IMG/VR virus record: IMGVR_UViG_3300029983_000007
Location: 124,001-188,000 of that record
Length of the DNA stretch: 64,000 nucleotides
Strand: one strand, 5' to 3'
Shown: positions 22,021-63,400 of the stretch, piece after piece
Numbering within the stretch: the stretch's first letter is position 1
How the letters are laid out: each line of letters starts with the position of its first letter
Made by a program: the position numbers and the translations under genes
The notes under the pieces: generated by a model
What the model was told of the DNA's origin: nothing
Databases searched by the model: none
The model's input: only the letters and a program-made list of their open reading frames with translations

Positions 22021-23554
22021 CATATTTATATTGTTGTTTTTTATATAGTTCATCTCTTCTTGATTCATATTGTTTCCATAATATCGTTTTATATTCAGGA
22101 TGAAATATATCTACTAAATCAAAAACTATTAATTTAGTTTTTAATTTGTGTAGACGAAGACCACGCCCAATTGACTGTAATACTACCTGTCCGCTACGAA
22201 AACTATCTAGAAATATTATATTGTTTATAGCTTTTATCGACACACCTGTACTTAGTGTTCCGTAGCTGGCTACTAATATTTTAGGATTACCTGTAGTATC
22301 TTCCATTATTTTTTTTATATATTCTCTCTTTTCAGTACTTACACTACCGTCAATGAAAAACACATCTTTACCAATACAATTATCCTTTAAATGATTAAAT
22401 ATCTCAGTTCCATATGTAATAGTATGAAATAGTAATAATGAATTAGATTTAAATTTATCTGTCAAATTTTTAACAAAAGTCTTTCTTTTAGCTGAATTAT
22501 GAATGTATTCACGTTCCAGATCATACGCACGGCGCCCATCACTTTTCTTAACATTATAAACTCCTTCAGCAAACTTATGATTATCATGATGTAACATAAT
22601 AACTTTTATTTTAAGTTCAGCTATCAATCCTTTATCCATAAGTTTTTTTGCATTAATAGTTATAAGTTTAGGACCTAATAAAGATTGTATAGTCAATATC
22701 TCAACAGATGAATCAGAAGGATATGTACCTGACATTCCTGCCCGTATTTTAGCAATACCAAAAGTTTTTGTTAATATAGATTGAATTGTTGCAGCCTTCG
22801 CTGTATGAGCCTCATCACAAAAAACAATTTCAAATTGTGAAAACCAATCTTTTGGATATTTTTCTAATGATTGATAAGTGCCAATATATACATTAGGTAA
22901 TTTTTCTCCTTCTCTATATTTTCTTGGTTTATCACTCATAACTTCATCTATACGAATATCTAATGGAGTTTTATTATCATTATTAAAACCGTAGTTATAG
23001 TCATTCAAATCATTATAAAATTGAGTAACTAAACTTATACTTGGTACAATTAATAAAACCTTAGCCTTAGGATTTACTTTTTTTAAGTAATAAAAAAGTA
23101 ATGTACCAAATACTAATGATTTACCACCTGCAGTAGCAATTTCAATTAATCCGTATTGATGTTTTAATAATTGAAATATTGCATCTACTTGATGTTCATA
23201 AGGCATAAATGGTTTACCATCAGGAGTTTTATGATCTTTATAAAAATCATCAATAAATTCTTGTAATTTTTCTTTTGATATGTCTTTATTGCGTGGAAAT
23301 TGGTATTGATTTTCTATTATAAATTTGTAACCATACTCTTTGCAGCATTTATAAATTTCACCCCATAAACCGAAGTTAATCACGCCATCTGAGAAATAGC
23401 TAATTCCGCCATCCCAAACGCCGAGCTTAAACCTTTTCATAAAACGGTAATTATTAACTTTTCTTGTTAAGTATAATTTAAGTTGATTATATTCACCTTT
23501 TGTTGATTCAGTTAGAATTAATTTTGAATTATCTTTGTTTAGTTTAAATTTCAT
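21998..23554 (-). CDS. uvsW: UvsW-like SF2 DNA helicase
   Basis: WDGxI N-terminus, ATAGGKS, DEAH, GMSGT, STGVSI, QSIGRGLR. Confidence 0.9.
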   Translation of the reverse strand: MKFKLNKDNSKLILTESTKGEYNQLKLYLTRKVNNYRFMKRFKLGVWDGGISYFSDGVINFGLWGEIYKCCKEYGYKFIIENQYQFPRNKDISKEKLQEFIDDFYKDHKTPDGKPFMPYEHQVDAIFQLLKHQYGLIEIATAGGKSLVFGTLLFYYLKKVNPKAKVLLIVPSISLVTQFYNDLNDYNYGFNNDNKTPLDIRIDEVMSDKPRKYREGEKLPNVYIGTYQSLEKYPKDWFSQFEIVFCDEAHTAKAATIQSILTKTFGIAKIRAGMSGTYPSDSSVEILTIQSLLGPKLITINAKKLMDKGLIAELKIKVIMLHHDNHKFAEGVYNVKKSDGRRAYDLEREYIHNSAKRKTFVKNLTDKFKSNSLLLFHTITYGTEIFNHLKDNCIGKDVFFIDGSVSTEKREYIKKIMEDTTGNPKILVASYGTLSTGVSIKAINNIIFLDSFRSGQVVLQSIGRGLRLHKLKTKLIVFDLVDIFHPEYKTILWKQYESRRDELYKKQQYKYDELKIKL

Positions 23555-23729
23555 TTAATGCCTTTAATTTTTCTTTTCTTATGATAGAATTTGCTTTATT
23601 GTAATAATCTTGATAATATTCTTTATTTGTTATGAAAAATTCACTTATATGATATTTATTAGTTTTGATTCCAAATTTATAAGCTAATTCATCAATATAA
23701 ATTTTATATGCCAACTCATCTAATATCAT
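23544..23729 (-). CDS. Small hypothetical protein, RxxKL tag class
   Basis: Ends IIRKEKLKALNEI. Confidence 0.65.
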   Translation of the reverse strand: MILDELAYKIYIDELAYKFGIKTNKYHISEFFITNKEYYQDYYNKANSIIRKEKLKALNEI

Positions 23730-23952
23730 TTATCAATTCTAATTTCTTTTTTCTAATTTGTATAATACAAACACTATTAATATGTTTATTAATAATATTA
23801 GTTAACAATTCAATAGATATTATATCATTTACATCATAAATATACTCAGAATCATCTAAATGAGTTATTATAACTCTAGGTTTCCAAGTTGCTTCAGCTA
23901 TCATTGATGCTGATTTAATTCCATATTTTTTTAATTCTTCGTCGCTTAACAT
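23716..23952 (-). CDS. Small hypothetical protein, RxxKL tag class
   Basis: Ends QIRKKKLELINDIR. Confidence 0.65.
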   Translation of the reverse strand: MLSDEELKKYGIKSASMIAEATWKPRVIITHLDDSEYIYDVNDIISIELLTNIINKHINSVCIIQIRKKKLELINDIR

Positions 23953-24410
23953 TATTTATATCCTCCTAAAATATTTGCAAGTTCAATTTTAGCTTTAACA
24001 GAATAGTTTATTGATTCTAAATTTTTAGATGTATCTCTTAAAAAATTAACATGTTCATCTAATTCATTTATAAAACATTGATAATCAGACAAATCAGCTT
24101 CAATCAATCTTAATTTTTCTGTACCAGAAGTTTTAACTTGGTATGATGTTGCATAGAATTCAAATTTATCTTTTGTTAGTACTTTCATTTTTTGAACAAG
24201 TTTATGTATTTTTACACTATAATTTTTTATTTCTTCTACTACCATTTGTCTTTGACTTATTGCTTCAGCTTGAATATCTGCGATATTCATCAAATTATCA
24301 TGTATTAATCTACCTGTCAATTTATTTACAATTGCAATCCATTGTTTACTAGATTCTAACATCTTTTTTTGTAATTTTTGACGTGAATCTAAATCTTCGT
24401 TTTCAGACAT
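23952..24410 (-). CDS. uvsY: UvsY-like recombination mediator
   Basis: About 152-aa helical protein (start moved to ATG 24410) with KFEFY...LIEADL...FLRDT.KNL..INYSVK; upstream of uvsW. Confidence 0.6.
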   Translation of the reverse strand: MSENEDLDSRQKLQKKMLESSKQWIAIVNKLTGRLIHDNLMNIADIQAEAISQRQMVVEEIKNYSVKIHKLVQKMKVLTKDKFEFYATSYQVKTSGTEKLRLIEADLSDYQCFINELDEHVNFLRDTSKNLESINYSVKAKIELANILGGYK

Positions 24411-24459
24411 AGTTATTACTTTATTTTTATTTTTATGTATTATAAATAACTGGTATAGT

Positions 24460-25890: not shown

Positions 25891-26231
25891 TATATGTTAA
25901 ATTTATTTGCTTCTAATTCATATTCATTCATATTTACTGTACCCATAAATTTATAATTATTAATTTCATAAAAATTATCAGTCAGATTATCTTCATATTC
26001 TGTCCAACCCCATTTATCATCTTCAACATTACCTCGATTTGGATTATATCCAATAAATATATATTTTGAATTAATACTCCTATTACTCAAAAAACCTTTA
26101 ATTCTATTTTCGCTACACTTTATTTGTCTCAAAGAGTCTTCAAATCTTTCATCAGTTGACATTAGCCAATGTCTACATGAATCATATAAATTAGAGTCAA
26201 AAACATCTTCAAATATTTTAATATACTTCAT
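25890..26231 (-). CDS. Tag-class small protein, paralog 3 of 3
   Basis: MKYIKIFE...HWLMSTDERF...ANKFNI. Confidence 0.75.
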   Translation of the reverse strand: MKYIKIFEDVFDSNLYDSCRHWLMSTDERFEDSLRQIKCSENRIKGFLSNRSINSKYIFIGYNPNRGNVEDDKWGWTEYEDNLTDNFYEINNYKFMGTVNMNEYELEANKFNI

Positions 26232-27868
26232 ATTTTAAATTTTAGGTTACCAGAGTCGTATATTCTGTATATTTTTCTATCAATCATAATTTGATGTTCA
26301 GTTTTATTTTTATCAAAACCTTGCTTGACTAATAAATCTTTTCTGAAGTTAAATCTATGATGTCTGATTCCGTCAATTATATAGTAATAATTTGGTTGTG
26401 TTTTTCCGTCATATTTAAATCCAAGAGTTTCATATAATTTACCTTGACTAAAACTTCTATCAGCGTATGTGGATATTTCATTTGGTTTATAATTTTTCAT
26501 GAAATATTTAAATAATCTTGATGCACCGCCAACAACGTTAGTATTTAATTTATTACAGAAACGTAATAGTTCATATTCACCTTTATTTGTTGATTTTTTA
26601 CCCATTGCTATACGTCTATTACCGAAAGTCATCAGACTAACTAATTCATCATTATAAAATAATCCAATTTTAACTTTTGATCCGACAAATCCTTGAATGT
26701 GATTGGTATCAAGAAATTCTCTAACCAACTTATTGTCAATTATTTCTTTAATTTCGCATTTTCTCGCATATAATTTAATAGTATTTTTACCTAATTTATT
26801 TAATATTATTGATTTAACGATTTCTTGTTTATATAACCAATCATCTTCCCATATATGAATTAATTGTATTCCTTGTTTTTCACACAACTCAGTTTTATTT
26901 AAATGATAATTATTTTCTTTGTGCAATTCATTATGCCAATATACTCCATTGAATTCAAACGCTATTTTTAAATCTGGTATATAAATATCTAATTCATATG
27001 GATTTAAAATAGTTCTATCATTGTATATTATATTAATCTTACAATTGTTTTTTATAAAAATGTGTAATTGAGTTTCATATCCACTATTTGAAAATGATCC
27101 AATTGGATTACATACAGTACAAATAACAGTCTTAGAAATTTTCCTATTATATAAAATATTAGCTACAATATTAAAATTGTGATTTTTTTTACAATCACAT
27201 TTAAATGTATAAATATTATCAATCAATGATATAATATTATTATTTTCATATAATTTTAATATTTTTTTAGTCCTATTTTTTTTTATTTTATCTTTTATTT
27301 CTAAAAATGAAAATGGATTATCAAACCCATGATTTTTTAAATTTGTTTCTTTTATTTTTTCTTTTATTTTTTCTGACTGCATTAGAATACCATTAAATCT
27401 GTCATTCATTGTGTTTTTGAATTTTAATTTAATTTCATTTGATTGCATAGGATTTAATACCTTATAATTATTGAAAGTGGTTTTTTCTTTTTTTAATTTA
27501 ATATCATTTAATTTAGAAACGTTATCAACTCCATATTTTTCTAAACAAGTTCTTTTTGATTTTACTGAATTATTATAATTTTCAACTCCATATTTTTCTA
27601 AGTTGGTTTTTTTAGATTTAAAATTGAAGCATTTTTTACAAGTGTAAATATCATATTTTGATATATTTTTATTATATTTTTGATAAGTTATGATTTTTTC
27701 ATTGTCACAAATGTCACATTTTACCAACAATTTAACCGCACTATTGATTGGTAATTGTGATATCAGTATTTCAATATTATCTCCACTTGATATGTTATTA
27801 TACCATTTTTTATAGTGAGATATTGTTTTATTACTAACTTTTATGTTTATTGTATTTTCTACTATCAT
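26228..27868 (-). CDS. Free-standing homing-endonuclease-like protein (KYGV repeats, PD-(D/E)xK core, Hef-like C-terminus)
   Basis: VKCDIC, LEKYGVEN repeats, ELDIYIPDLKIAFEFNGVYWH, LIHIWEDDW, YELLRFC, YADRS; paralog of 45687-47573. Confidence 0.75.
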   Translation of the reverse strand: MIVENTINIKVSNKTISHYKKWYNNISSGDNIEILISQLPINSAVKLLVKCDICDNEKIITYQKYNKNISKYDIYTCKKCFNFKSKKTNLEKYGVENYNNSVKSKRTCLEKYGVDNVSKLNDIKLKKEKTTFNNYKVLNPMQSNEIKLKFKNTMNDRFNGILMQSEKIKEKIKETNLKNHGFDNPFSFLEIKDKIKKNRTKKILKLYENNNIISLIDNIYTFKCDCKKNHNFNIVANILYNRKISKTVICTVCNPIGSFSNSGYETQLHIFIKNNCKINIIYNDRTILNPYELDIYIPDLKIAFEFNGVYWHNELHKENNYHLNKTELCEKQGIQLIHIWEDDWLYKQEIVKSIILNKLGKNTIKLYARKCEIKEIIDNKLVREFLDTNHIQGFVGSKVKIGLFYNDELVSLMTFGNRRIAMGKKSTNKGEYELLRFCNKLNTNVVGGASRLFKYFMKNYKPNEISTYADRSFSQGKLYETLGFKYDGKTQPNYYYIIDGIRHHRFNFRKDLLVKQGFDKNKTEHQIMIDRKIYRIYDSGNLKFKI

Positions 27869-27898: not shown

Positions 27899-27926
27899 AT
27901 TATAAAAATTTATTCATGTTTTGTTT
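27899..27926 (-). promoter_or_regulatory. Putative middle promoter AAAC-N18-TATAAT
   Basis: Exact spacing; 30 nt upstream of the endonuclease start. Confidence 0.55.
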
Positions 27927-43214: not shown

Positions 43215-43267
43215 AATTCATCTATTTTTTTTTAAATTATAGTCATTAAATATATTATAGTTTAATT

Positions 43268-49763: not shown

Positions 49764-50204
49764 ATGGAAATTAAAGAAAATAGATTATTAAAATTGAAAA
49801 TGATAACTGCTATTAATTTAATTCGTAGCGAGTTAAAACTAAGAAATTTAGATTTCACTAATAATGTTGGATTATTTGAGATAACAATTAAAGGAAATAG
49901 TTTTTTTGCTGAAATTGATGGAGGTGAAGAAATACAATGTTGGATTAGAATATCTAAAGATAATTATTTTGATTTGTGTGAAAATGGTATAAATATTTCA
50001 GATTTTATAAAAAACCTGACTATCATAATTTCTAATTTTGAGAAATTTTATAAATTAAAAGAAAATATTGATAATGAACTGTATAAGTTAAGATATAATT
50101 TTGAAAAGTGTGTTGGTGAATCTGGTATTAATAATGTAGTTGTTAACGATGATTTTTTTGATGATATGATATTTGAGAATTTAATAACTTGTTATGAAAT
50201 TTGA
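49764..50204 (+). CDS. Hypothetical protein
   Basis: Start ATG 49764; -7 box TATCTTTG at 49735-49742. Confidence 0.65.
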   Translation: MEIKENRLLKLKMITAINLIRSELKLRNLDFTNNVGLFEITIKGNSFFAEIDGGEEIQCWIRISKDNYFDLCENGINISDFIKNLTIIISNFEKFYKLKENIDNELYKLRYNFEKCVGESGINNVVVNDDFFDDMIFENLITCYEI

Positions 50205-50999: not shown

Positions 51000-51335
51000 A
51001 TGAAGATATTGGATAAATTTTCACATTTTATAAAAAAAACGTATTATTATTTTAAGTGGGGTAGTGTACTTTATCCTATTTCTAATAAATTAGATTTTTT
51101 ATTGGTGTATTTGGAAAAATTTGAAATTGTTTCTATAGAAATATCAAATTATGAGTGTGTAATTGTATTTGGAGATTATTCGAAATTAATTTTTTGGAAT
51201 GCAAATAGATGGTATGGATGGATGAATTCAGGACAAATGTATTTTAGTAATGGAAAATCAATTAAATGGTCAAGTAAATCACCATCTTGTGAGGTTTTAT
51301 ATAAATATAGAAAATTGATAAATAATAATAAATAA
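51000..51335 (+). CDS. Paralog 1 of 3 (no RxxKL tail)
   Basis: FWNANRWYGWMNSG...KSPS. Confidence 0.7.
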   Translation: MKILDKFSHFIKKTYYYFKWGSVLYPISNKLDFLLVYLEKFEIVSIEISNYECVIVFGDYSKLIFWNANRWYGWMNSGQMYFSNGKSIKWSSKSPSCEVLYKYRKLINNNK

Positions 51336-51772
51336 TGATAAAATTTAAAAAAATTTTTAAAAAAATTTTTAAAAAAATAGTAAGACCATTTGAATTGTTT
51401 TATTATAATATTAGTTGGGGTATGAGATTAAATAGACTGGATAAGAATTTAGATATTTTGTTAATATATTTAAAATCTGTCAAAATTGAGTTGATTCAAT
51501 TAAATGAATATAATTGTATAATAAAATTTACTGATAATTCAGAACTAACTTTTTGGACTGCAAATAGGTGGTATGGATTTATGAATTCAGGACAAATGAA
51601 TTTTAGTAATGGTAAATCAATTTCATGGTCAAGTAAATCTCCATCTTATGAAGTGCTACATGAATATAAGAAATTAATTAAAAAACACGAAAAATCAACA
51701 AAGGTAGATTTTTATGAATATTTGCCTATAAAATTACTCAGAAAAGAAAAATTAAAAAAAATTAAATTATGA
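51335..51772 (+). CDS. Paralog 2 of 3, RxxKL tag class
   Basis: FWTANRWYGFMNSG; ends LPIKLLRKEKLKKIKL. Confidence 0.7.
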   Translation: MIKFKKIFKKIFKKIVRPFELFYYNISWGMRLNRLDKNLDILLIYLKSVKIELIQLNEYNCIIKFTDNSELTFWTANRWYGFMNSGQMNFSNGKSISWSSKSPSYEVLHEYKKLIKKHEKSTKVDFYEYLPIKLLRKEKLKKIKL

Positions 51773-52191
51773 ATAAATTACTAAAAAGTATATATTATCG
51801 TATTTTATGGTTCAAATTGAGATCTCATAAATGTTATGATGCTCTTGATATTTTGACTATATATTTAAAAAATGTAGAAATATCCAAAATTACACTTGAT
51901 AGATCTAATTATAAAATATTTTTTTTAGATGGATCAAGATTAAAATTTAGTAATTGTGATAGATGGCCTGGCTGGATGTCCAATGGAGATATGACATTTC
52001 ATAATGGTAAAATTATGTCATGGTATGATAAATCACCATCATATGAAACATTATTTAAATTTAAAAATTTTATATTGAATTATGAAAAAAAAGAAGCAAA
52101 AAGGATACTATATGAGGAAAAAATAAAATTTGATGATTGTTTACCTATAAAATTACTCAGAAAAGAAAAATTAAAAAAAATTACAAAATAA
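51769..52191 (+). CDS. Paralog 3 of 3, RxxKL tag class
   Basis: DRWPGWMSNG; ends LPIKLLRKEKLKKITK. Confidence 0.7.
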   Translation: MNKLLKSIYYRILWFKLRSHKCYDALDILTIYLKNVEISKITLDRSNYKIFFLDGSRLKFSNCDRWPGWMSNGDMTFHNGKIMSWYDKSPSYETLFKFKNFILNYEKKEAKRILYEEKIKFDDCLPIKLLRKEKLKKITK

Positions 52192-52709
52192 TGGGATTAG
52201 CTATATCATATTTTAGTAGAATTAAATTAAAAGATAATGCAGATATTGAAGATGATGAATATTATATTGAAAATGATAAATATTTCATGTATCAATTAGG
52301 TTCATTAAAGAATGGTCAAAGTTGTGAAAAAACATTTGAATCTGTACAAGGACATTTTAGTGCTGGTTCATATTCTGGTTATGGTGTTTGGAGAAAAAAT
52401 TTAATAGAAATGCTAGGTTATGTTTGTATTCAGGATGTTTGTAATGATTTTGATACTAATATTAGATTGATTAAATTAAAAGAAATTGAAACTGGTAATA
52501 AAATAAGAATTAAACCATTTTATGAGATTATTTGTTTCAGTGATTGTGACGGAGCTATAGGTCCTGAGGTATCAAAAAAATTATATGAAGATTTTGTAGA
52601 GTTTGATAATATTGCAAGTATGCAAGGTGATTATTTTTATGAATTATATTCTAATTTTAAAACTGCATTTGAAGTAGCATCAGATAATGGAGCTGTTTTT
52701 TTTTATTAA
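52191..52709 (+). CDS. Hypothetical phage protein
   Basis: Start ATG 52191 (TAATG overlap); FSAGSYSGYG.WR, FSDCDGAIGP; internal IRLIKLKEI. Confidence 0.7.
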   Translation: MGLAISYFSRIKLKDNADIEDDEYYIENDKYFMYQLGSLKNGQSCEKTFESVQGHFSAGSYSGYGVWRKNLIEMLGYVCIQDVCNDFDTNIRLIKLKEIETGNKIRIKPFYEIICFSDCDGAIGPEVSKKLYEDFVEFDNIASMQGDYFYELYSNFKTAFEVASDNGAVFFY

Positions 52710-55194: not shown

Positions 55195-55345
55195 CTTTAT
55201 TCATATCTTTTTTTATTAAGTGCTCAATATATTTTGATTTGTTTATATTATTATCTTCACAAATTTCATCTAATATATTATCTAATTCAATATTTATAGA
55301 TACTGATAATGTTTTCTTTTTGTCTGTTATTGTTGGTCTTCCCAT
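55175..55345 (-). CDS. 56-aa ribbon-helix-helix protein with GRP hook (not in ORF track)
   Basis: MGRPTITDKKKTLSVSINIELDNILDEICEDNNINKSKYIEHLIKKDM...; overlaps the topo C-half start. Confidence 0.75.
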   Translation of the reverse strand: MGRPTITDKKKTLSVSINIELDNILDEICEDNNINKSKYIEHLIKKDMNKDENKSK

Positions 55346-55359: not shown

Positions 55360-55425
55360 TATATATAAAATATTAACTAATTTGTTTGAAAATAGATAAA
55401 AATGAAACTTTTTTATTTATATATA
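55360..55425. promoter_or_regulatory. Divergent promoter region of the RHH cassette
   Basis: Minus strand AAAC-N18-TATATA at 55360-55387; plus strand TTTATATATA at 55416-55425. Confidence 0.6.
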
Positions 55426-55444: not shown

Positions 55445-55606
55445 ATGAAAAAACCAATCACAAAAAGAAAAGTTTCTATCTCAATAAATAGTGAAGTATA
55501 TAATTATATTGAAGATAGATTTGAAAATAAATCTAAATATATTGAATATTTAATATATCAAGATATATTAAAATGTGGCAAATTAAAAAAAGATATAATA
55601 TTATGA
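55445..55606 (+). CDS. 53-aa ribbon-helix-helix protein (not in ORF track)
   Basis: MKKPITKRKVSISINSEVYNYIEDRFENKSKYIEYLIYQDIL...; ATGA-coupled to the endonuclease. Confidence 0.75.
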   Translation: MKKPITKRKVSISINSEVYNYIEDRFENKSKYIEYLIYQDILKCGKLKKDIIL

Positions 55607-56430
55607 TATTAGATACTGAAATATTATTTAATGTGAGTAATAAAAATAAAGCACATTTGATATGCAAAGGTTATGATGTGACTCACAAAGATGTTATAAT
55701 TAAAGTTGAAGATTTGCCTACATATAGTCATTATAAAATAAAAGTAAAATGCGATATATGTGGAACTGAAAAATATTTAGGAAATCATAAATATATGAAA
55801 AACACAAGACTTAATACTAAAGATTATTGTTGTTGTCAAAAATGTGGAGTTAATAAATTACTTGATACATTTAAAGAAAATTACGGGTGTATAAGTAGTC
55901 AACATCCTAATATCAAATTAAAGCAAGAGAAAACAAATATCGAAAGATATGGTAGTAAATCTTGTCAATCAAATAAAGAAATTAAACAAAAATCATATGA
56001 TACTATGATAAAAAAATATGGTGTAAAATATTCATTACAGAATAATGAAATAAAAAAAAAGTTTATGTTAAAAATAGATGATACTGTTAAAAAAACTAAT
56101 ATTACAAAAGTTCAAAGAGGAGTAATGGTAGATTATGATAATTTTAGTTCATTTAAAGATTATAGAAAATTAGTTGATATAGAAACAAGAAGAAACAAAA
56201 AACTATTATATGAAGAATGGAATGGACTTGATTTTTATGATAATGAATATATTGGTGAAAATTTAAATTTAAATTATAGAGATAAATTATATCCATCTAT
56301 AGATCATAAAATATCAATATTGAATGGATTTTTAGATGATATTGATCCTTATAGTATTGGTAATATTACGAATTTGTGTATAACAACAAGAACAAATAAC
56401 TCAAAGAAGAATTCTAAAAATGTGTTCTAA
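55603..56430 (+). CDS. HNH-like homing endonuclease lying antisense between the split-intein halves
   Basis: Start ATG 55603; VKCDICG, YG repeats, PSIDHKIS...NLCITTRTNNSKK. Confidence 0.75.
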   Translation: MILDTEILFNVSNKNKAHLICKGYDVTHKDVIIKVEDLPTYSHYKIKVKCDICGTEKYLGNHKYMKNTRLNTKDYCCCQKCGVNKLLDTFKENYGCISSQHPNIKLKQEKTNIERYGSKSCQSNKEIKQKSYDTMIKKYGVKYSLQNNEIKKKFMLKIDDTVKKTNITKVQRGVMVDYDNFSSFKDYRKLVDIETRRNKKLLYEEWNGLDFYDNEYIGENLNLNYRDKLYPSIDHKISILNGFLDDIDPYSIGNITNLCITTRTNNSKKNSKNVF

Positions 56431-56442: not shown

Positions 56443-56476
56443 AAAAGAAAGAGATAAATAATTATCTCTTTCTTTT
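56443..56476. terminator. Bidirectional terminator between the endonuclease and the topo N-half
   Basis: aaaagaaagagataa-ataa-ttatctctttctttt. Confidence 0.75.
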
Positions 56477-58264
56477 TAATATTTTATCAGTAATTAATAT
56501 TTCTTTGACTTTTACTAATATAATTTCATTGTTTCTTAATATTGGAATCTCATGATTTTCACTAAATGTATATTCATATCCATTGATATTTAATTTTATT
56601 ATATTAGTCTTGTGAGTTTCAATTATATTGAGTATTTTTTTCCATTCATTGTTGTGTGTTAAAACTTCATCGTCATAATTAATATCTTTTATTGCTACAT
56701 ATCCTCTTTTAGTTAGAACTAACGTATTTTCTTCTATACAATCAGCATCTGTCATCATTATAACTTTACCGTATCTTAATGTTCTTGTTGATGTGTATTG
56801 TTTACCAAATTCTAATCCTAATATTTTTATAATTGAAGTAATTTCATCGTTTTCTCTCATTTTTTGTATAGAAACATCCCTTACATTCAATGGTTTACCC
56901 TTAAGAGGGTATATTCCATAATAGTCATTTCCAACAACTGATAATCCTGCACGAGCTGTTGATTTTGCTGAATCTCCTTCAGTTAGTATTAATCCACATT
57001 TCATGCTATGTGGTTGCTTACCTGCCATATTAGCATCATCAAGCTTCGCTATTTTAACTTTAATTTTCTGATTATTCTGAGTTGATTTCTTAGCATCTTG
57101 TAATTCTTTGAATGATGCAAAATTTACTATGTCATTTTTTATTTGAGATGACATAAGTTTTTTGATAAATGAATCTGAAACAGTTACATCTTTGATGATT
57201 TCAGTTATCATTCTTGTAGTTAGATTTTCTTTTGTTTGTGTTTCAAATGATGGATTAGGAATTTTACAACTAAGAAATAAAAATAAATGATTTTTGATCA
57301 TTGATTGTTTAACGCTTGTTGATTTTATTTTATCATCAAGTGATTTGGTGATTTGATTAGTTATGTAATTAACATGAGTACCTCCAATATGAGTAGATAT
57401 TCCATTTACCATTGATACTTGTTGAAACATATCATTAGGTGTGCGTGCTATACCGACTTCCCAGTTCTCATTTATTTTTTCGTAGAAGAACTCTTCATCA
57501 TCATTGATAAACATCTTCATGTAATCTTTAAATGACTTGATAGGTATTAATACATCATTATAGTAGACTTTAACTCCAGTGCTATAAGCTGCAATGTCAA
57601 TAGCTCGTTTTAAAAATATTGATTGAATTTCATCTGTTATTTCAGTTAGATTAAATTTTTCAAAATCTGGATAATATGTAATTTTTGTGTAATTTTTGTC
57701 TGATGTAGTTATTTTTGGCTTAGTTTTATCAGACATATTATTGGTGAATGTTTGAATGTATTTATGCTTACCATCTGCAGTTTCAATTGTAAATTTCTTT
57801 GAGAATATGTTAGTTGTTTTTATTCCAATTCCATGTGTACCACCAACCATCCTTTTATCATCGTCCGTGAAATTCTCCCCCGTGAGCAAATTTCCGAAAA
57901 TCAACTCACACACATAAATTTTATGTTCTTTGTGCATAACAATAGGTACTCCTGGTCCGTCGTTTTCAATTGTTATGTGGTCTTTATCTACGTTTATCTT
58001 GATGTATTTGACTTGACCATCTGTTCTGATGTAATGATCTGATGCATTGGTTAATGCTTCATCGAATAGTTTAATAAATCCTGCATTATAATTTACTTCT
58101 TTATATACAAATTTGTTGTCTTTAATTTCATTAATATCTTCAAATACATACATTTTGGTTGGTTCAGTATATATATTTCCAATATACATTCCTGGTTTTT
58201 TTAATACGTGTTCAATTGGTGTTAATTTCTTATATCTATCCTCTATTGTTTTTTTATTCATCAA
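56462..58264 (-). CDS. Type IIA topoisomerase N-half (GHKL ATPase plus part of TOPRIM) ending in a 92-aa N-intein
   Basis: HVLKKPGMYIG, DEALTNA.D, NDGPGVP, GGTHGIG.K, LTEGDSAK, PLKGKPLNV, IMMTDAD/CIEENT. Confidence 0.92.
   Translation of the reverse strand: MMNKKTIEDRYKKLTPIEHVLKKPGMYIGNIYTEPTKMYVFEDINEIKDNKFVYKEVNYNAGFIKLFDEALTNASDHYIRTDGQVKYIKINVDKDHITIENDGPGVPIVMHKEHKIYVCELIFGNLLTGENFTDDDKRMVGGTHGIGIKTTNIFSKKFTIETADGKHKYIQTFTNNMSDKTKPKITTSDKNYTKITYYPDFEKFNLTEITDEIQSIFLKRAIDIAAYSTGVKVYYNDVLIPIKSFKDYMKMFINDDEEFFYEKINENWEVGIARTPNDMFQQVSMVNGISTHIGGTHVNYITNQITKSLDDKIKSTSVKQSMIKNHLFLFLSCKIPNPSFETQTKENLTTRMITEIIKDVTVSDSFIKKLMSSQIKNDIVNFASFKELQDAKKSTQNNQKIKVKIAKLDDANMAGKQPHSMKCGLILTEGDSAKSTARAGLSVVGNDYYGIYPLKGKPLNVRDVSIQKMRENDEITSIIKILGLEFGKQYTSTRTLRYGKVIMMTDADCIEENTLVLTKRGYVAIKDINYDDEVLTHNNEWKKILNIIETHKTNIIKLNINGYEYTFSENHEIPILRNNEIILVKVKEILITDKILKRKR
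56465..56740 (-). other. Split intein, N-fragment (IntN)
   Basis: Block A CIEENTLV, GYVAIKDI..DDEVLTH, block B FSENH, then stop. Confidence 0.9.
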
Positions 58265-58286: not shown

Positions 58287-58314
58287 TATATATCTTAAAA
58301 ATTATGTAAAGTTT
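58287..58314 (-). promoter_or_regulatory. Putative middle promoter AAAC-N18-TATATA
   Basis: Upstream of the topo N-half. Confidence 0.65.
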
Positions 58315-58372: not shown

Positions 58373-58687
58373 TTAAATATTATTTAATTTTTCTATCTTC
58401 AATTTTCTACATATTTTTTGATGGTATGATTCTATAAATTTTTCAAAATCTTCAAAATTTAGAAATTCTTGTTTAAGTTCAACATGAGGATAAGGTGCTG
58501 TACTATATATGTTTTTATGAAAACATATTACTTCATTAGAGTATTCATCCATATATGAATTTATGTTTATATAGCCACCATTTTCTCTTATGATATAATA
58601 ATTTGAACATCTAAGTTTATAGCCAATTGATGTTATAAGTTTTAATACACGGTCATCAATGTAATCTTTGCTTAAATGATCATTCAT
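58373..58687 (-). CDS. Small protein, RxxKL tag class, paralog of the next gene
   Basis: KLI.SIGYK, ENGGYININ, EFLNF; ends RKLKIEKLNNI. Confidence 0.7.
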   Translation of the reverse strand: MNDHLSKDYIDDRVLKLITSIGYKLRCSNYYIIRENGGYININSYMDEYSNEVICFHKNIYSTAPYPHVELKQEFLNFEDFEKFIESYHQKICRKLKIEKLNNI

Positions 58688-58983
58688 AATAAGTTTTTTA
58701 ATTTTAGTTTTCTGAATATTCTTTTATGATATTCTTTTATGAATGTTTCAAAATTTTTAAAATTTAAAAATTCTTTTGAATAAACTTTGATTTCATTTGC
58801 TATTTGGTAATATTTACTGAATGATATAATTTTATCACCATCATTTAGTACATAAAAATTTATATTTATATATCCATTTTCTTCAAATAACGTAAATTTA
58901 TCAAATCTATTTTTATAACCTATAGACTCAATTAATTTGATGCATTTTTTGTCGTAATATTCTCTATATCTAAAATCAATCAT
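58684..58983 (-). CDS. Small protein, RxxKL tag class
   Basis: Ends RKLKLKNLL; AAAC-N18-TATATA at 59014-59041. Confidence 0.7.
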   Translation of the reverse strand: MIDFRYREYYDKKCIKLIESIGYKNRFDKFTLFEENGYININFYVLNDGDKIISFSKYYQIANEIKVYSKEFLNFKNFETFIKEYHKRIFRKLKLKNLL

Positions 58984-59233
58984 GTGATGTTATTATGCTT
59001 ATAATTAAAAATTTATATATTATTATTTTGATGACATGTTTTTGATATTTGTTAAATAAATGACTAAAATATATAATAAATATGTTTTTATTTTTTTTAT
59101 TGAAATAGTTTATTTACTTTTGTGAAGTAATTGAATTATAATAATATTTATAATAATATTATTAATTAGTTTTTAATTTAAATTATTATGTATATCTTTG
59201 TATTGTAATATAAAAACTTAATAATGAATTTTT

Positions 59234-60255: not shown

Positions 60256-60273
60256 TTTTTAAATCTAAATTAC

Positions 60274-60474
60274 ATGAAAAAGATAACATTTAATAGAGTG
60301 ATTATAACGTTAGTTTGCATTACTTATTTAATTACTGCTATATTATTTATTTTAGCATTTCCTTTATCAGGTAAAGACAATCAAGTGTATCTAGATTATA
60401 CTGTAATATTTGGTATGATTGTACCTGTAATTTTAGCAGCAATTTTTTTAATTTGTACAATTTGGACAGATTAA
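60274..60474 (+). CDS. Small two-helix membrane protein
   Basis: Two hydrophobic segments. Confidence 0.65.
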   Translation: MKKITFNRVIITLVCITYLITAILFILAFPLSGKDNQVYLDYTVIFGMIVPVILAAIFLICTIWTD

Positions 60475-60502
60475 TAATGTAACATTATTTGATAATTTTA
60501 TT

Positions 60503-60531
60503 AAAAAAGTCAGGCTTAGACCTGACTTTTT
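60503..60531. terminator. Bidirectional terminator
   Basis: aaaaaagtcagg-cttaga-cctgactttttt; a degenerate inverted copy follows at about 60536-60563. Confidence 0.8.
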
Positions 60532-60547
60532 TAATTTTTTGTCAGGA

Positions 60548-60757
60548 CTAAGCTTGACTTTTTATTATGTTATCTAACTTTTTCTTTCTTTCAATTCGTA
60601 AATCATACTTATCAAAATCTTTTGTGTATTTATCAATATTACACCAATTGTCGTTTTCGTATATGTATAATGAATAATTGTTTTTATTATAATATAAATC
60701 TCCTTCAATTGGATTATCGGAAAGTTCTGATATTTTATCGTAATTGAATATAGGCAT
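60548..60757 (-). CDS. Small protein, RxxKL tag class
   Basis: NPIEGDLYYN...YIY...W; ends ERKKKLDNIIKSQA. Confidence 0.65.
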   Translation of the reverse strand: MPIFNYDKISELSDNPIEGDLYYNKNNYSLYIYENDNWCNIDKYTKDFDKYDLRIERKKKLDNIIKSQA

Positions 60758-61043
60758 TTTCTATCTCTTTTAACTTTATTAGTTTTGATATTCTATCAAA
60801 TCTATTTATGTTTATTTTTAAATCCTCATGAGTATACATAGTTCTTATGTAAACATCAACAATTGGATATTCACAATTGACTCTATAATTCAATATTTTT
60901 GAACTGTTAATATATTCATTTGTTAAATATTTTGAAATGTCATACATTAATTGAGCATCTTTAAATTTTGGATTTAACACTAAATTGTTAACTAAATTAT
61001 TTAGATTTTCTGTTATCTCATCGTACATTTTTTTATCTTCCAT
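60735..61043 (-). CDS. Small protein, RxxKL tag class
   Basis: DRISKLIKLKEIE near the C-terminus. Confidence 0.65.
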   Translation of the reverse strand: MEDKKMYDEITENLNNLVNNLVLNPKFKDAQLMYDISKYLTNEYINSSKILNYRVNCEYPIVDVYIRTMYTHEDLKININRFDRISKLIKLKEIENAYIQLR

Positions 61044-61569
61044 TTAATGATATTAATTTTAATCTTCTTTTTTCTGTTTTAATTCTTTCTGGTAGATTTA
61101 TTATAGTTTTTTCATAATCAACTCCTTCTTTTCTTCTATTAAATTTTCCAGTTATCATATCTATACCTGATTTTTTATTTATTAATTCATTATAGAAAAA
61201 AATTTCATTGTTTTTGAAATTTTCTATTTTGCTACAACCTTTGATTGGATTTGATATATTGTCAAATACTAATTTACCATCTATGTAAAATTTGTATATA
61301 GTTGTGTTGTTTATGTAACAATCATGTGCAACATTATATCTAGTGTGAGCTGGACCATAAAGATTGTGTAGCTTACCATGTTTTAAATGGTACTCATAAC
61401 CATCAAATAATATATGAGTAATATCCTTCAAATTGAACTCTATGTACTCATATAAGTCATAAAATGACTTAAAATCTTTTTTATATAATCTACCTGTGAC
61501 GGCATCTATAGATAAAAAAGATTCAAAGTCAATCTTACATTCAACATCTAAAAATTTATACATTATCAT
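61033..61569 (-). CDS. Hypothetical protein with LHxxxGPA motif, RxxKL tag class
   Basis: HGKLHNLYGPA; ends KRRLKLISLNGR. Confidence 0.65.
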   Translation of the reverse strand: MIMYKFLDVECKIDFESFLSIDAVTGRLYKKDFKSFYDLYEYIEFNLKDITHILFDGYEYHLKHGKLHNLYGPAHTRYNVAHDCYINNTTIYKFYIDGKLVFDNISNPIKGCSKIENFKNNEIFFYNELINKKSGIDMITGKFNRRKEGVDYEKTIINLPERIKTEKRRLKLISLNGR

Positions 61570-61816
61570 GTGATAACAATTTATTTAATTTTTGTTTTCT
61601 GATTTCTTTTTCAGTGTAGAAATAATCAGGAAAATTCCAACGAACATTTGAACGTCCTTTTTCTTTAGAGAAAACTTCAAATCCTGCATCATCTGACATC
61701 ATAACATGATATTCTACTATTTTAGATATCTCATAATAATGATCTTTGTATATACATGAATCTGATGTTGTTAATGATTTTTTACAAAGATACTTTTTAT
61801 TGAGCAGGTATTTCAT
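61556..61816 (-). CDS. Small beta-rich family member, RxxKL tag class
   Basis: YLCKK...Y.I...YFYTEKEIRKQKLNKL. Confidence 0.7.
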   Translation of the reverse strand: MKYLLNKKYLCKKSLTTSDSCIYKDHYYEISKIVEYHVMMSDDAGFEVFSKEKGRSNVRWNFPDYFYTEKEIRKQKLNKLLSHDNV

Positions 61817-62063
61817 AATTTAATTTATTTAATTTATCTTTTCTTTCATCTTTTATTGTTCCAAAGTATTCATAAAAATAATCATAATGCATATTATTCT
61901 CTAATGAGAATACTATATTACCAATATCATTAGTCATTATTACTTCACCATGATGCTGATATATAACTCTGTATTTTTTGCCTTTTTCAAAATAGGTTCT
62001 ATTATTCATTATAGATATTATTGGTTTTTTACAATAATATAAATCATCAATCTTTGGATTCAT
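61797..62063 (-). CDS. Small beta-rich family member, RxxKL tag class
   Basis: YYCKK...FEKGKKY...YFGTIKDERKDKLNKL. Confidence 0.7.
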   Translation of the reverse strand: MNPKIDDLYYCKKPIISIMNNRTYFEKGKKYRVIYQHHGEVIMTNDIGNIVFSLENNMHYDYFYEYFGTIKDERKDKLNKLNYEIPAQ

Positions 62064-62346
62064 TATCTAAATCACTTTTTAAATAATTAGCTAATCTTTG
62101 AATTTTATATGCATCATCAGGATTAAAAATAAATTCATCAAATGCTCCATATTTGCACCTATATCCAAATATATATTTAACTCCGTGTTTTAATCTACTC
62201 CAAAATGAACCTCTATTTAAAAGTACATGAGCATAGCACATTGGATAACTTTTACCAGTTTCATTTGTATCTTCATCATATAAGAACACAATTTGATGAT
62301 CTGTTGAATGACAACTACAAATTAATATATCTTCTTTCTTTTTCAT
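62047..62346 (-). CDS. Hypothetical protein (CxCxxxxH)
   Basis: LICSCHSTDHQ; FWSRLK..VKYIFGY. Confidence 0.7.
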   Translation of the reverse strand: MKKKEDILICSCHSTDHQIVFLYDEDTNETGKSYPMCYAHVLLNRGSFWSRLKHGVKYIFGYRCKYGAFDEFIFNPDDAYKIQRLANYLKSDLDNESKD

Positions 62347-62513
62347 AATTTAATATTTTTTTTTAATAATTCTTCTAACTCGTTTATAGTATTTTCACAT
62401 AATATAGTTTGTTCTCTTACTCTAAATCCTCTTGTCCACGAGTATTTTTTGTCTGTTAAATGTAATTGTTCTTTTCTTAATTCAATTAATCTATTTTCAA
62501 TCAATTCTTCCAT
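62343..62513 (-). CDS. 56-aa hypothetical protein (not in ORF track)
   Basis: MEELIENRLIELRKEQL...; fills the gap and is ATGA-coupled to the next gene. Confidence 0.55.
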   Translation of the reverse strand: MEELIENRLIELRKEQLHLTDKKYSWTRGFRVREQTILCENTINELEELLKKNIKL

Positions 62514-62811
62514 TATTTAATTTTTCTAATTTTCTTTTTCTATATCCTTGATGATCACTAAAATATTCAGAAAATAGATTGTTTTTTCTATCTGTTTCAA
62601 GCCAAAATGCATACTTATCATCATCAGTATAATTTATTGATATTATAACTTCATCTGATTTGCTATCATTGTACATAGTTTTAGTAGCAGATTTTGTGTG
62701 ATTAACAGTGTATATGTTATTTTCTTTGAATATTAATTTTTCATCAGATTTTCTATATACATCTTTTGTACAATAAACTTTATCTCCTGCGTTTAGTATT
62801 TTTACTGACAT
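62497..62811 (-). CDS. Small beta-rich family member, RxxKL tag class
   Basis: GDKVYC...EYF...YRKRKLEKL. Confidence 0.7.
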   Translation of the reverse strand: MSVKILNAGDKVYCTKDVYRKSDEKLIFKENNIYTVNHTKSATKTMYNDSKSDEVIISINYTDDDKYAFWLETDRKNNLFSEYFSDHQGYRKRKLEKLNNGRID

Positions 62812-63077
62812 TCTATAAATAATTTTTCTAATTTCATTTTTCTATATTCTTTTATGCTCATAAAATATTCATAATAATTCCATCCATATGCATTTTTTAG
62901 ATTAAGAGTATAAAAAAACCCATTACTTTCAATTGAAACTAAACTTTCTATACCTTTCTGCTTATACACAAAATGAACAATGTATACATTGTTCATTTTC
63001 ATGACTAATGTATTATCAAAATCATAAAAATCATTTATGCAATAAACTTTATCTCCTTGCTTTGGTATTAACTTCAT
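62802..63077 (-). CDS. Small beta-rich family member, RxxKL tag class
   Basis: GDKVYC...EYF...YRKMKLEKL. Confidence 0.7.
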   Translation of the reverse strand: MKLIPKQGDKVYCINDFYDFDNTLVMKMNNVYIVHFVYKQKGIESLVSIESNGFFYTLNLKNAYGWNYYEYFMSIKEYRKMKLEKLFIECQ

Positions 63078-63400
63078 TGTTTCAATATATTTAATAATTT
63101 TCTTTTTCTTTTTTTACTAATCCATTTATTTCTATTAAAATCAAATACATTTTTTATAATATTGTCACTTGGATTATTTGTGACAGTTTTGCATTCTTTT
63201 AAATCAATCCAACAATGTGATATTCCATCTTCTGAAACATAACCATAAAAACCAGGTAGATAACAACGAGTATCATGATCTGGTATATCATATTCAGTAA
63301 TCAATTTAAATTCTTGAACCTTACCAATAGGTTCAACTGTTGAATTGAATGTAAAGTGAATAATATTACAATCTTTTATCCATTCTTCTATTTCTGTCAT
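63074..63400 (-). CDS. Small protein, RxxKL tag class
   Basis: Ends KKRKRKLLNILKQ. Confidence 0.7.
   Translation of the reverse strand: MTEIEEWIKDCNIIHFTFNSTVEPIGKVQEFKLITEYDIPDHDTRCYLPGFYGYVSEDGISHCWIDLKECKTVTNNPSDNIIKNVFDFNRNKWISKKRKRKLLNILKQ

What the first reader, a model, noticed from the sequence alone, without database searches (positions are those of the whole stretch)
23544..63400. Second, mutually exclusive C-terminal tag R-x-x-K-[LI]-x-x-[LI] on early/middle small proteins
Seen: 16 ORFs carry this basic amphipathic helix at or near the C-terminus (low coordinates 23544, 23716, 42683, 43035, 51335, 51769, 58373, 58684, 60548, 60735, 61033, 61556, 61797, 62497, 62802, 63074). One internal copy occurs in 52191-52709. 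They span many unrelated cores. None has the MKYxKxFE leader or the KFNI tail, and they lie behind AAAC-N18-TATAWW or host-type promoter motifs. Inference: a shared docking helix that recruits many accessory proteins to one hub (host or phage complex, membrane, DNA or protease). Together with the KFNI class this would form a two-channel protein addressing system.
Basis: partly seen in the sequence, partly recalled or inferred. Interest (0 to 1): 0.78.

Follow-up and report, generated by a model that had tools for sequence, protein, structure and literature searches.

The report
Shared C-terminal tag on phage proteins
In this very AT-rich huge phage from peat, and in about fifty related viral contigs, roughly a third of the small proteins, which otherwise look unrelated, end in the same short helical motif (R-K-x-K-L-x-K-L-N); selection acts on the protein, which points to one shared but still unknown binding function.

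Summary
All 16 listed ORFs carry R-x-x-K-[LI]-x-x-[LI] 1-11 residues from the C-terminus, against 0.5 expected from shuffled C-termini. The tighter consensus is [IL]-K-x-[LI]-R-K-x-K-L-x-K-[LI]-N.

It is not a window oddity. One DNA pattern for the motif hits 98 sites in 49 IMG/VR contigs. Ninety-three lie in frame in ORFs of 40 or more codons, 80 of them within 12 codons of the stop. Only 1 of 55 hits in cellular genomes does so. With tails removed, 270 tagged proteins fall into 174 BLAST clusters.

Selection acts on the protein. Leu and Arg positions use all synonymous codons, whole codons vary at the x positions, and operon-last genes keep the motif. Internal copies exist, and less AT-rich relatives carry variants.

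The A-rich translation-start artefact is rejected as the cause. The next gene's ATG does pile up directly after the motif.

AlphaFold2 puts the motif in a C-terminal helix on two different folds. The conserved residues share one face that mixes Arg/Lys with Leu, so it is not a classic amphipathic or membrane helix.

The best reading is a portable docking helix for one common partner. That partner is unknown, and "early/middle" timing and a "two-channel addressing system" are unproven.

The parts
23544..23729 (-). 61-aa ORF; tail RKEKLKAL at nt 23556-23579, 3 aa before the stop. The helicase gene's ATG starts 1 nt after the L8 codon.
   Evidence: tail HMM 16.6 bits; ESM Atlas model of aa 36-61 matches long single helices
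23716..23952 (-). 78-aa ORF; tail RKKKLELI at nt 23731-23754, 4 aa before the stop.
   Evidence: HMM 13.1 bits
42683..43033 (-). 116-aa ORF upstream of a D12-class adenine methyltransferase gene. Atypical tail RELKLRLL at nt 42701-42724. Orthologues in L001 and L009 keep it.
   Evidence: tail HMM below about 5 bits
43035..43214 (-). 59-aa ORF; tail RKDKLEKL at nt 43047-43070, an exact match to the DNA consensus. AAAC-N18-TATAAT lies upstream at 43236-43263.
51335..51772 (+). 145-aa ORF; tail RKEKLKKI at nt 51740-51763. Paralogue of 51769 and of the tail-less 51000.
51769..52191 (+). 140-aa ORF; tail RKEKLKKI at nt 52159-52182.
51000..51335 (+). 111-aa paralogue of 51335 and 51769 (53% and 40% identity) that stops before the tail. 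It is a natural tail-less version.
58373..58687 (-). 104-aa ORF; tail RKLKIEKL at nt 58385-58408. It is the last gene of its string, followed by a gap of about 110 nt with a promoter-like motif, and still has a full tail. AF2 gives a beta-sheet plus helix fold, with the tail at the end of helix 78-102.
58684..58983 (-). 99-aa paralogue of 58373; tail RKLKLKNL at nt 58690-58713, 1 aa before the stop.
60548..60757 (-). 69-aa ORF; tail RKKKLDNI at nt 60566-60589. It is the last gene of the array and is followed by a hairpin terminator at 60500-60558.
60735..61043 (-). 102-aa ORF; weak tail RISKLIKL at nt 60771-60794, 11 aa before the stop.
   Evidence: HMM 6.9 bits
61033..61569 (-). 178-aa ORF; tail RRLKLISL at nt 61045-61068.
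   Evidence: HMM 6.6 bits; no Pfam match
61556..61816 (-). 86-aa ORF; tail RKQKLNKL at nt 61577-61600.
   Evidence: HMM 18.3 bits
61797..62063 (-). 88-aa ORF; tail RKDKLNKL at nt 61821-61844.
   Evidence: HMM 19.9 bits
62497..62811 (-). 104-aa ORF of the SH3-like family; tail RKRKLEKL at nt 62518-62541.
62802..63077 (-). 91-aa ORF of the SH3-like family; tail RKMKLEKL at nt 62820-62843. AF2 (pLDDT 90.7) gives a small beta-barrel plus helix 75-90 that carries the motif.
63074..63400 (-). 108-aa ORF, first tagged gene of the 63400-60548 array; tail RKRKLLNI at nt 63086-63109.
   Evidence: tail HMM below about 5 bits
52191..52709 (+). 172-aa ORF with an internal copy RLIKLKEI at nt 52464-52487, followed by 73 aa. 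The copy resembles the tail of 60735 and is conserved in L010. It may be a fusion of a tagged gene with a downstream ORF.

Best explanation
The motif is a portable C-terminal alpha-helical module of about 15 residues: [IL]-K-x-[LI]-R-K-x-K-L-x-K-[LI]-N. It is selected at the protein level and sits on many structurally different small proteins of a clade of AT-rich huge phages. These phages are Mahaphage-like, and their hosts are probably Bacteroidota.

Shown: the motif is real and in frame, it is nearly always terminal, and it is present on at least 174 BLAST-distinct cores. It is independent of the downstream gene, predicted helical, and outside the conserved fold of at least one core.

Inferred: one helix face (I-4, L-1, R1, K4, L5, L8, I11, flanked by K-3, K2, K7 and N9) docks into an acidic and hydrophobic groove of a single common partner. 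That partner would be a phage or host protein or complex. The variable cores would then be brought to, or regulated by, the same hub.

Residues after L8/N9 are unconstrained, so the next gene's start codon has moved right up to the motif's edge.
For: - Positional enrichment is 16 observed against 0.5 expected. The tail HMM gives 16 window hits against 0 in block shuffles.
- The DNA pattern finds 98 sites in 49 IMG/VR contigs. Ninety-three lie in frame in ORFs of 40 or more codons, and 80 are within 12 codons of the stop. In 596 Gb of cellular genomes only 1 of 55 hits does so.
- Negative controls: the T4 early region has 0 hits among 59 small ORFs, and a Lak-A1 region has 0.
- 270 of 904 unique proteins are tagged. 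Their tail-less cores form 174 clusters, and an SH3-like core HMM covers only 18 of these.
- Codons: L5 uses all six Leu codons at the background ratio, R1 uses all six Arg codons, and whole codons vary at x3 and x6.
- Thirty-three operon-last tails keep the positions that the regex does not demand: K2 88%, K7 55%, K-3 39%.
- In homologous pairs with 47% core identity, K2 is 83% identical, x3 and x6 are 47-49%, and positions 10-12 are 26-32%.
- Less AT-rich relatives carry variants: R-[ND]-x-K-[LI]-x-x-I-L in LR745206 and K-R-T-K-L-I-D-K-V-L in LR756501.
- AF2 places the motif in a helix on two folds: an SH3/Tudor-like barrel (helix 75-90, pLDDT 90.7) and a beta-sheet plus helix fold (helix 78-102).
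- Foldseek matches to SH3 and KOW proteins mostly end at residue 59-75, before the helix.
- On a helical wheel the conserved positions share one face and the free positions lie opposite. This geometry follows directly from the logo.
Against: - No partner was identified and there is no experimental data.
- The helix has high pLDDT in the SH3-like family (blocks 94 and 82). It may pack on its own barrel there. I had no coordinates to measure burial.
- A tail-less paralogue (51000-51335) exists, so the tail can be lost.
- The tail also makes the next gene's upstream region more A-rich: 0.64, against 0.56 after untagged genes. Eighty-four percent of tagged genes overlap the next gene. A second, RNA-level benefit therefore cannot be excluded.
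- AGA at R1 and TTA at L8 are somewhat over-used. Part of this comes from how the loci were ascertained.
- Cluster counts rest on BLAST of short, fast-evolving AT-rich proteins. Some 'unrelated' cores may be remote homologues.
Confidence: 0.45

Rival explanations
1. Polyanion (DNA or RNA) binding helper. The basic tail adds non-specific or groove-binding affinity for nucleic acid to many small nucleic-acid-binding proteins.
For: - Tail net charge is about +3.8, while the cores are neutral.
- Both modelled cores resemble small folds often used for nucleic-acid binding: SH3/Tudor/KOW-like and PUR-alpha/PC4-like (TM about 0.46, probability 0.9).
- One longer tagged protein has a weak gp32-like match (E 4e-4).
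Against: - The fold matches are weak (E above 0.01).
- Leu/Ile at positions 5 and 8 and the hydrophobic positions -4, -1 and 11 are as conserved as the basic residues, and they lie on the same face. Electrostatic tails do not need that.
- One identical helix on a third of the small proteins would give them all the same specificity.
Confidence: 0.18
2. A structural or oligomerisation element. The helix caps its own domain or pairs with tails of other copies as a short coiled coil, and no external hub exists.
For: - The helix has high AF2 confidence in the SH3-like family.
- In 58373 the tail continues a long helix that packs on the sheet.
- Hydrophobic spacing of 3-4 residues.
Against: - The invariant R1 and K4 sit in the middle of the hydrophobic stripe, which disfavours homomeric coiled coils.
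- The same residues are conserved on cores with different folds.
- Confidence drops along the tail of 58373, from 91 to 74 to 66.
- Structural neighbours of the barrel lack the helix.
Confidence: 0.15
3. A timing or degradation tag. The tail is recognised by a protease or adaptor, so that a whole class of small proteins is removed together. This is a special case of docking.
For: The tail lies near the C-terminus and mixes basic and hydrophobic residues. From memory, this resembles the ClpX C-motif-2 class (MuA-type).
Against: - The distance to the free C-terminus varies from 1 to 12 residues, and the sequence there is unconstrained.
- Several families carry the motif internally, with 40-170 residues after it.
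- No protease gene was seen in the window.
Confidence: 0.08
4. A DNA-level junction used for recombination, that is, cassette shuffling or tandem duplication at conserved gene ends. The peptide would be a by-product.
For: - The motif lies at gene junctions in dense same-strand arrays of paralogues.
- The best PDB neighbour of one core is an integron cassette protein. This is a curiosity only.
Against: - Tail DNA copies in the window are only 64-90% identical over 20-58 nt.
- Synonymous and whole-codon variation is present.
- The motif is always in frame 0.
Confidence: 0.05
5. An artefact of the next gene's A-rich, Shine-Dalgarno-less translation start region, which is overprinted on the upstream C-terminus.
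For: - Starts in this clade have no SD and an A-rich -20 to -10 region.
- Eighty-four percent of tagged genes overlap the next gene.
- The next ATG starts -1 or +1 nt from the L8 codon in 79 of 207 cases.
- N9 reaches 86% when AAT+G forms that ATG.
- Upstream A content is highest after tagged genes.
Against: - Operon-last tails are equally conserved.
- Leu and Arg are held through synonymous, less A-rich codons.
- The TT of the Leu codons falls on A-preferred positions.
- Untagged junctions reach normal A content without the motif.
- Internal copies exist.
- The DNA consensus never occurs upstream of operon-first genes or in other frames.
- N9 is still 31-33% without the overlapping ATG.
Confidence: 0.04

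Closest known systems
Terminal targeting peptides that load unrelated cargo into HK97-fold shells: encapsulin cargo-loading peptides and the T4 capsid-targeting sequence (from my own knowledge)
   Same: A short terminal peptide is shared by otherwise unrelated proteins. It is portable and sits outside the folded core.
   Different: - Those peptides differ in sequence. Encapsulin tags are Gly/Ser/Leu-rich and extended, and the T4 tag is N-terminal and cleaved.
- Nothing here shows packaging.
- The tagged genes lie among DNA-metabolism genes, not structural ones.
Hub-binding short linear motifs of replication proteins: clamp-binding motifs and partners of the SSB acidic tail (from my own knowledge)
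   Same: Many different proteins use one short, usually terminal, motif to reach one hub.
   Different: - The consensus here is basic and Leu-rich and helical. It is not QL[SD]LF-like or PIP-like.
- About 30% of small ORFs carry it, far more than any known clamp or SSB interactome in a phage.
- The partner is unknown.
Basic helices that bind acidic, hydrophobic grooves, for example calmodulin-binding helices (from my own knowledge)
   Same: A helix with interleaved Arg/Lys and Leu/Ile at spacings of 3-4 residues.
   Different: No calmodulin-like protein is known or was found here. The hydrophobic moment is low.
Hyperplastic small-gene regions and multigene families of large viruses: T4-type plastic regions and multigene families of large eukaryotic DNA viruses (from my own knowledge)
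   Same: Dense arrays of fast-evolving small paralogous genes of unknown function.
   Different: In those arrays the conserved elements are intergenic DNA or whole-domain homology. Here it is one in-frame peptide shared across non-homologous cores. The T4 early region has none.
SH3/Tudor/KOW-like small beta-barrel phage proteins
   Same: The core of 62497 and 62802 and their family has this fold by AF2 and Foldseek. The family has 4115 clusters at 50% identity.
   Different: This applies to only 18 of the 174 tagged clusters. The C-terminal helix with the motif lies outside the region shared with known barrels. There is no Pfam or PHROG membership.

Membership tests
Short linear motif or targeting peptide shared by unrelated proteins | The same short motif occurs on cores without detectable homology. 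| tested here: met
   Tail-less cores form 174 BLAST clusters. About 11 independent cores lie in the window. Two different AF2 folds carry the motif.
Short linear motif or targeting peptide shared by unrelated proteins | Position-specific amino-acid conservation with free intervening and flanking positions, maintained through synonymous codons. | tested here: met
   Logo; codon usage; conservation in homologous pairs.
Short linear motif or targeting peptide shared by unrelated proteins | A defined binding partner or destination. | not testable with these tools
   No interaction or localisation data exist, and no multimer prediction was available.
Membrane-targeting amphipathic helix (MinD/FtsA type) | A high hydrophobic moment with a purely hydrophobic face. 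| tested here: not met
   Mean hydrophobic moment is 0.20, against 0.30 for shuffled tails. Mean hydrophobicity is -0.45. R1 and K4 lie within the Leu stripe.
C-terminal degron (ssrA or ClpX C-motif type) | The motif lies at a fixed position next to the free C-terminus. | tested here: not met
   One to twelve unconstrained residues follow the motif. Several families carry it internally.
Translation-initiation region of the downstream gene (A-rich, no SD) | The motif depends on a downstream start and is conserved at nucleotide level, not amino-acid level. | tested here: not met
   Operon-last tails are equally conserved. Synonymous Leu and Arg codons are used. The consensus is absent from other frames and from intergenic leaders.
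DNA recombination site at cassette ends (attC or PeSL-like) | Near-identical DNA copies, independent of reading frame. | tested here: not met
   Copies are 64-90% identical and always in frame 0. Inverted-repeat structure was not examined.
Coiled-coil oligomerisation helix | A regular heptad with hydrophobic a and d positions over several heptads. | tested here: inconclusive
   The helix spans only about 4 turns, and either register puts R1 or K4 in a core position. This follows from the geometry of the logo. No oligomer prediction was possible.
SH3/Tudor/KOW-like beta-barrel (core of 62497 and 62802 only) | A five-stranded small barrel fold. | tested here: met
   AF2 pLDDT is 90.7 with 6 strands. 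Foldseek probabilities are 0.9-1.0 to Tudor, SH3, KOW and NifZ proteins, but E is above 0.01 and TM is 0.4-0.6.
Any Pfam, PHROG or PDB sequence family | A significant profile match. | tested here: not met
   The 16 window proteins have no match that reaches significance in Pfam (limit 0.1) or PHROGs (limit 0.01): the best single-protein E-values are 0.0024 and 0.00047, each family is matched by only one protein, and no family is shared. Of 30 longer tagged proteins, only one matches DUF6794 and one matches gp32 weakly. The PDB profile search is empty.

The most novel reading that the evidence does not exclude
The RK helix and the K-F-N-[IL] end are two sorting or docking codes of a phage-encoded protein-addressing system. 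Under this reading, hundreds of small proteins of huge Bacteroidota phages are routed by a terminal peptide to two different hubs or destinations. Candidates include a replication or transcription factory, the capsid interior with its ejected proteome, or a host machine. The KFN motif can also occur as internal repeats.
Probability: 0.12. Interest if true: 0.9.

Novelty: new variant of a known kind. Interest (0 to 1): 0.64.

Why it matters
Most genes of huge phages are small ORFs with no homologues and no handle for study. Here one 15-residue peptide is shared by about 30% of the small ORFs in the window. It is also found on at least 270 distinct proteins from 49 viral contigs. A single experiment could therefore assign a common partner or destination to hundreds of dark-matter proteins at once. 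That experiment is a tail-peptide pull-down, or a structure-prediction screen against phage and host proteomes.

The work also gives a clean, testable case of a short linear motif that spreads across unrelated phage proteins. It shows how gene overlap is shaped by protein constraint, because the next gene's start codon abuts the last constrained codon.

Tried and rejected
- Megablast of a 6.6-kb stretch against GenBank phages found nothing.
- tblastn of three small tagged proteins against phages found nothing.
- Pfam and PHROGs on the 16 proteins gave only isolated weak single-protein matches (best E 0.0024 and 0.00047), none shared.
- Pfam on 30 longer tagged proteins gave one DUF6794 match and one weak gp32 match.
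- A PDB profile search gave one spurious hit.
- Literature searches for the motif strings, and for huge-phage small-protein motifs, found nothing relevant.
- An ESM Atlas search with the tail alone scored 0.44 or less. It was uninformative except that the segment is modelled as one helix.
- The translation-start artefact was tested in several ways and rejected as the cause.
- The membrane amphipathic helix reading was rejected on hydrophobic moment.
- DNA-level recombination repeats are not supported.
- tRNA and Rfam scans of the window were empty.
Model coordinates are not exposed, so burial of the conserved face could not be measured.
They are not used as evidence.
- Caveat on gene calls: they are greedy ATG-ORFs of 40 aa or more, not a trained gene finder.
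- Caveat on ascertainment: the 71 viral loci were found by a DNA pattern with fixed AT-rich codons. This inflates the tagged fraction and the AGA/AAA/TTA usage there.

Full report
**What the window is.** The 64-kb window has 20-33% G+C, about 23% over most of it. It carries tail-fibre-like genes, a helicase, a split T4-type topoisomerase II, thymidylate synthase, a D12 adenine methyltransferase and two large HNH-type homing-endonuclease-like genes. No GenBank phage is similar at the DNA level.

By protein, the nearest relatives are the 634-735-kb uncultured huge phages LR756501-4 and LR745206. Their authors place these in the Mahaphage clade and predict that they replicate in Bacteroidetes (PMC7162821). 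The window belongs to, or is near-identical with, the 330-kb IMG/VR contig IMGVR_UViG_3300029983_000007. It is found in peat metagenomes.

- Of 23 regex hits in 83 ORFs, 16 lie in the last 20 residues.
- Shuffling only the last 20 residues, which keeps the Lys-rich composition, gives 0.5 on average and at most 4 in 2000 trials.
- With tails removed, three paralogue groups appear and eight cores are singletons. The count of independent cases is therefore about 11.
- The paralogue 51000-51335 lacks the tail.
- No tagged protein has the K[FY]N[IL] end or the MKYxKxFE start.

**The motif outside the window.** A DNA pattern for R-K-x-K-L-x-K-L-N with the common codons matches 98 sites in 71 stretches from 49 IMG/VR contigs.
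- Ninety-three of the 98 lie in frame in an ORF of 40 or more codons. Eighty are within 12 codons of the stop and 13 are internal. Five are short or cut by a locus end.
- The same pattern in 596 Gb of bacterial and archaeal genomes gives 55 scattered single hits, and only one has that geometry.
- In window plus loci, 270 of 904 distinct ORF products carry the tail. That is 259 of 739 products under 200 aa, but this fraction is inflated by how the loci were found. In the window it is 16 of 55.
- Tail-less cores form 174 BLAST clusters.
- The largest family runs from MFKxGDKVVCID to RFISLKEYRKQKLxKL. It has 4115 clusters at 50% identity in metagenomes, no name and no Pfam family. A core HMM of that family covers only 18 of the 174 clusters.
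- The extended logo is [IL]-4, K-3, x, [LI]-1, R1, K2, x, K4, L5, x, K7, [LI]8, N9, x, [IL]11.
- Stretches of LR745206 (29% G+C) and LR756501 (31% G+C) have arrays of small ORFs that end in variants: R-[ND]-x-K-[LI]-x-x-I-L and K-R-T-K-L-I-D-K-V-L.
- The T4 early region (59 small ORFs) and a 42-kb Lak-A1 stretch (25% G+C) have none.

- L5 is encoded by all six Leu codons in background proportion (TTA 62% against 64%).
- R1 uses all six Arg codons. AGA is over-used, partly because of ascertainment.
- K positions follow the background AAA/AAG ratio.
- At x3 and x6 whole codons vary.
- In the window the DNA consensus with up to three mismatches is found essentially only in frame 0 at ORF ends. 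It is never found upstream of operon-first genes.

There is a real link to the downstream gene.
- Eighty-four percent of tagged genes overlap the next gene, with a median overlap of 11 nt. For untagged small genes the figure is 44%.
- The next ATG starts at -1 or +1 nt from the L8 codon in 79 of 207 cases, and never inside codons 1-8.
- Starts in this clade have no Shine-Dalgarno sequence and an A-rich -20 to -10 region.
- Leaders after tagged genes are the most A-rich, at 0.64 against 0.56-0.58.

Even so, the downstream start does not make the motif.
- The 33 tails with no closely following same-strand gene, including 58373 and 60548 in the window, keep the positions that the regex does not demand: K2 88%, K7 55%, K-3 39%.
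- N9 falls from 86% to 31-33% when it is not part of an AAT+G start, but this is still about three times background.
- Several families carry the motif internally.

I read the pile-up of start codons at the motif's 3' edge as genome compaction stopping at the last constrained codon. In line with this, residues 10-12 are less conserved than the cores: 26-32% against 47% identity in homologous pairs. K2 is 83% identical. In SH3-like arrays the common extension C-S-N-Q-E-I-K is simply the other-frame reading of the next gene's M-F-K-x-G-D start. This follows directly from the sequence.

**Structure.** AlphaFold2 was run on two tagged proteins.
- For 62802 (30-sequence alignment, pLDDT 90.7) it gives a small beta-barrel followed by helix 75-90, which holds the motif (R79-L86).
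- Foldseek finds SH3, Tudor, KOW and NifZ-type barrels with probability 0.9-1.0. These matches have weak E-values and TM of 0.4-0.6. Most aligned ranges stop at residue 59-75, before the helix.
- For 58373 (pLDDT 81) it gives a helix, five strands and a 25-residue C-terminal helix 78-102. Confidence falls from 91 to 66 across the tail. The best, weak neighbours are PUR-alpha and PC4-like folds.

The same tail therefore ends two different folds. On a helical wheel at 100 degrees per residue, I-4, L8, R1, L5, L-1, I11 and K4 fall within one arc, and K-3, N9, K2 and K7 flank it. The four free positions lie opposite. This geometry follows from the logo.

Because Arg and Lys sit inside the Leu stripe, the Eisenberg hydrophobic moment (0.20) is lower than for shuffled tails (0.30), and mean hydrophobicity is -0.45. 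This is not a membrane-type amphipathic helix. The cores are neutral and the tail carries about +3.8.

**Interpretation.**
- Shown: a protein-level, portable, helical C-terminal module on many different cores. It is specific to one clade of huge phages and independent of the downstream gene.
- Inferred, and my preferred mechanism (confidence 0.45): the mixed basic and Leu face docks into an acidic, hydrophobic groove of one common partner.
- Rivals are a nucleic-acid-binding helper (0.18), an intramolecular or oligomerisation helix (0.15), a degradation or timing tag (0.08), a recombination junction (0.05; tail DNA copies are only 64-90% identical) and the translation-start artefact (0.04).

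Nothing supports 'early/middle' timing. AAAC-N18-TATAWW is enriched, 17 matches against 8 expected, and precedes several RK strings. The copy at 27899-27926 heads a string that contains both KFNI-class and RK-class genes. A related family (L005, L041) has the RK motif at residues 39-46. One member has four or five internal L-K-D-S-N-K-F-N-V-F-T-P repeats. This suggests that the KFN signature is also a linear motif, and that the two motifs are not strictly exclusive at the motif level.

**Comparison with known systems and novelty.** I found no family, paper or annotated protein that describes this motif. In kind it resembles shared terminal peptides, such as encapsulin cargo tags, the T4 capsid-targeting sequence, and clamp or SSB hub motifs. 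It differs from them in sequence, in being a basic Leu-rich helix, and above all in prevalence. I rate it a new variant of a known kind.

Noticed in passing
In window plus loci 43 proteins end this way, and KFNI, KFNL and KYNI are by far the commonest C-terminal 4-mers among untagged proteins.
   Followed up: partly
L005:1842-2495 (+); L041 several genes, e.g. 11545-12078, 12075-12443; L002:239-748: A multi-copy family carries the RK motif at residues 39-46, followed by 80-170 more residues. The L005 member has 4-5 internal repeats of the type L-K-D-S-N-K-F-N-V-F-T-P. The L041 members have L-S-D-T-T-K-L-N-V-Y-T repeats. The KFN-type signature therefore also occurs as an internal repeat.
   Followed up: partly
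window 55175-55345 (-), 55445-55606 (+), 63433-63609 (-), 63689-63853 (+): Four small paralogues sit in two divergent pairs and share the signature N-K-S-K-Y-I-E-x-L-I. They look like ribbon-helix-helix regulators, judged from the sequence pattern only. One pair sits at the head of the 63400-60548 RK array.
   Followed up: no
window 26228-27868 (-) and 45687-47573 (+): There are two large paralogous HNH-type homing-endonuclease-like genes (phrog_3339, E about 1e-127), one in each orientation.
   Followed up: no
window 53290-55194 (-) and 56462-58261 (-): The T4-type topoisomerase II is encoded in two separate genes. Between them lie a divergent pair of small regulator-like genes and a DUF7487 gene at 55573-56430.
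   Followed up: no
window, 17 sites, e.g. 27899-27926, 43236-43263, 45659-45686, 55360-55387, 58287-58314, 59014-59041, 63623-63650: AAAC-N18-TATAWW occurs 17 times against 8 expected (0 of 100 shuffles reach 17). Most sites lie in intergenic DNA upstream of minus-strand gene strings. It is a plausible promoter class.
   Followed up: partly
window and loci L001-L071, gene starts: There is no Shine-Dalgarno signal (G at or below 0.1 at every position). Instead A is enriched at -20 to -10, up to 0.65. This fits a Bacteroidota-type translation start.
   Followed up: partly
arrays in L032, L037 and L043 (e.g. L037:4555-4791 and 4767-5009): In SH3-like gene arrays the residues after the tail (C-S-N-Q-E-I-K) are the alternative-frame reading of the next gene's conserved M-F-K-x-G-D-K start. 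The overlaps are about 25 nt. A conserved peptide end is thus created by overprinting.
   Followed up: partly
L072 (LR756501) 2900-3247, 3248-3472, 19401-19916: Small ORFs of the 735-kb phage end in another shared acidic-aromatic tail, roughly D-P-Y-G-E-E-[DN]-W-[DE]-K. Shared C-terminal signatures may be a general habit of this clade.
   Followed up: no
window 60500-60558: A strong hairpin with T-runs on both sides lies between the convergent gene 60274-60474 (+) and the end of the RK array at 60548 (-). It is probably a bidirectional terminator.
   Followed up: no
window 49764-50204 (+), aa 7-14; orthologue L010:3745-4176: A motif-like stretch (R-L-L-K-L-K-M-I) lies at the N-terminus of a 146-aa protein and is kept in the orthologue. 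The tail HMM scores it at 8 bits. Its meaning is unclear.
   Followed up: no
window 1887-3653 (-): A 588-aa NAD-synthetase-like gene (phrog_36784, E 4e-39) lies next to the tail-fibre-like genes.
   Followed up: no
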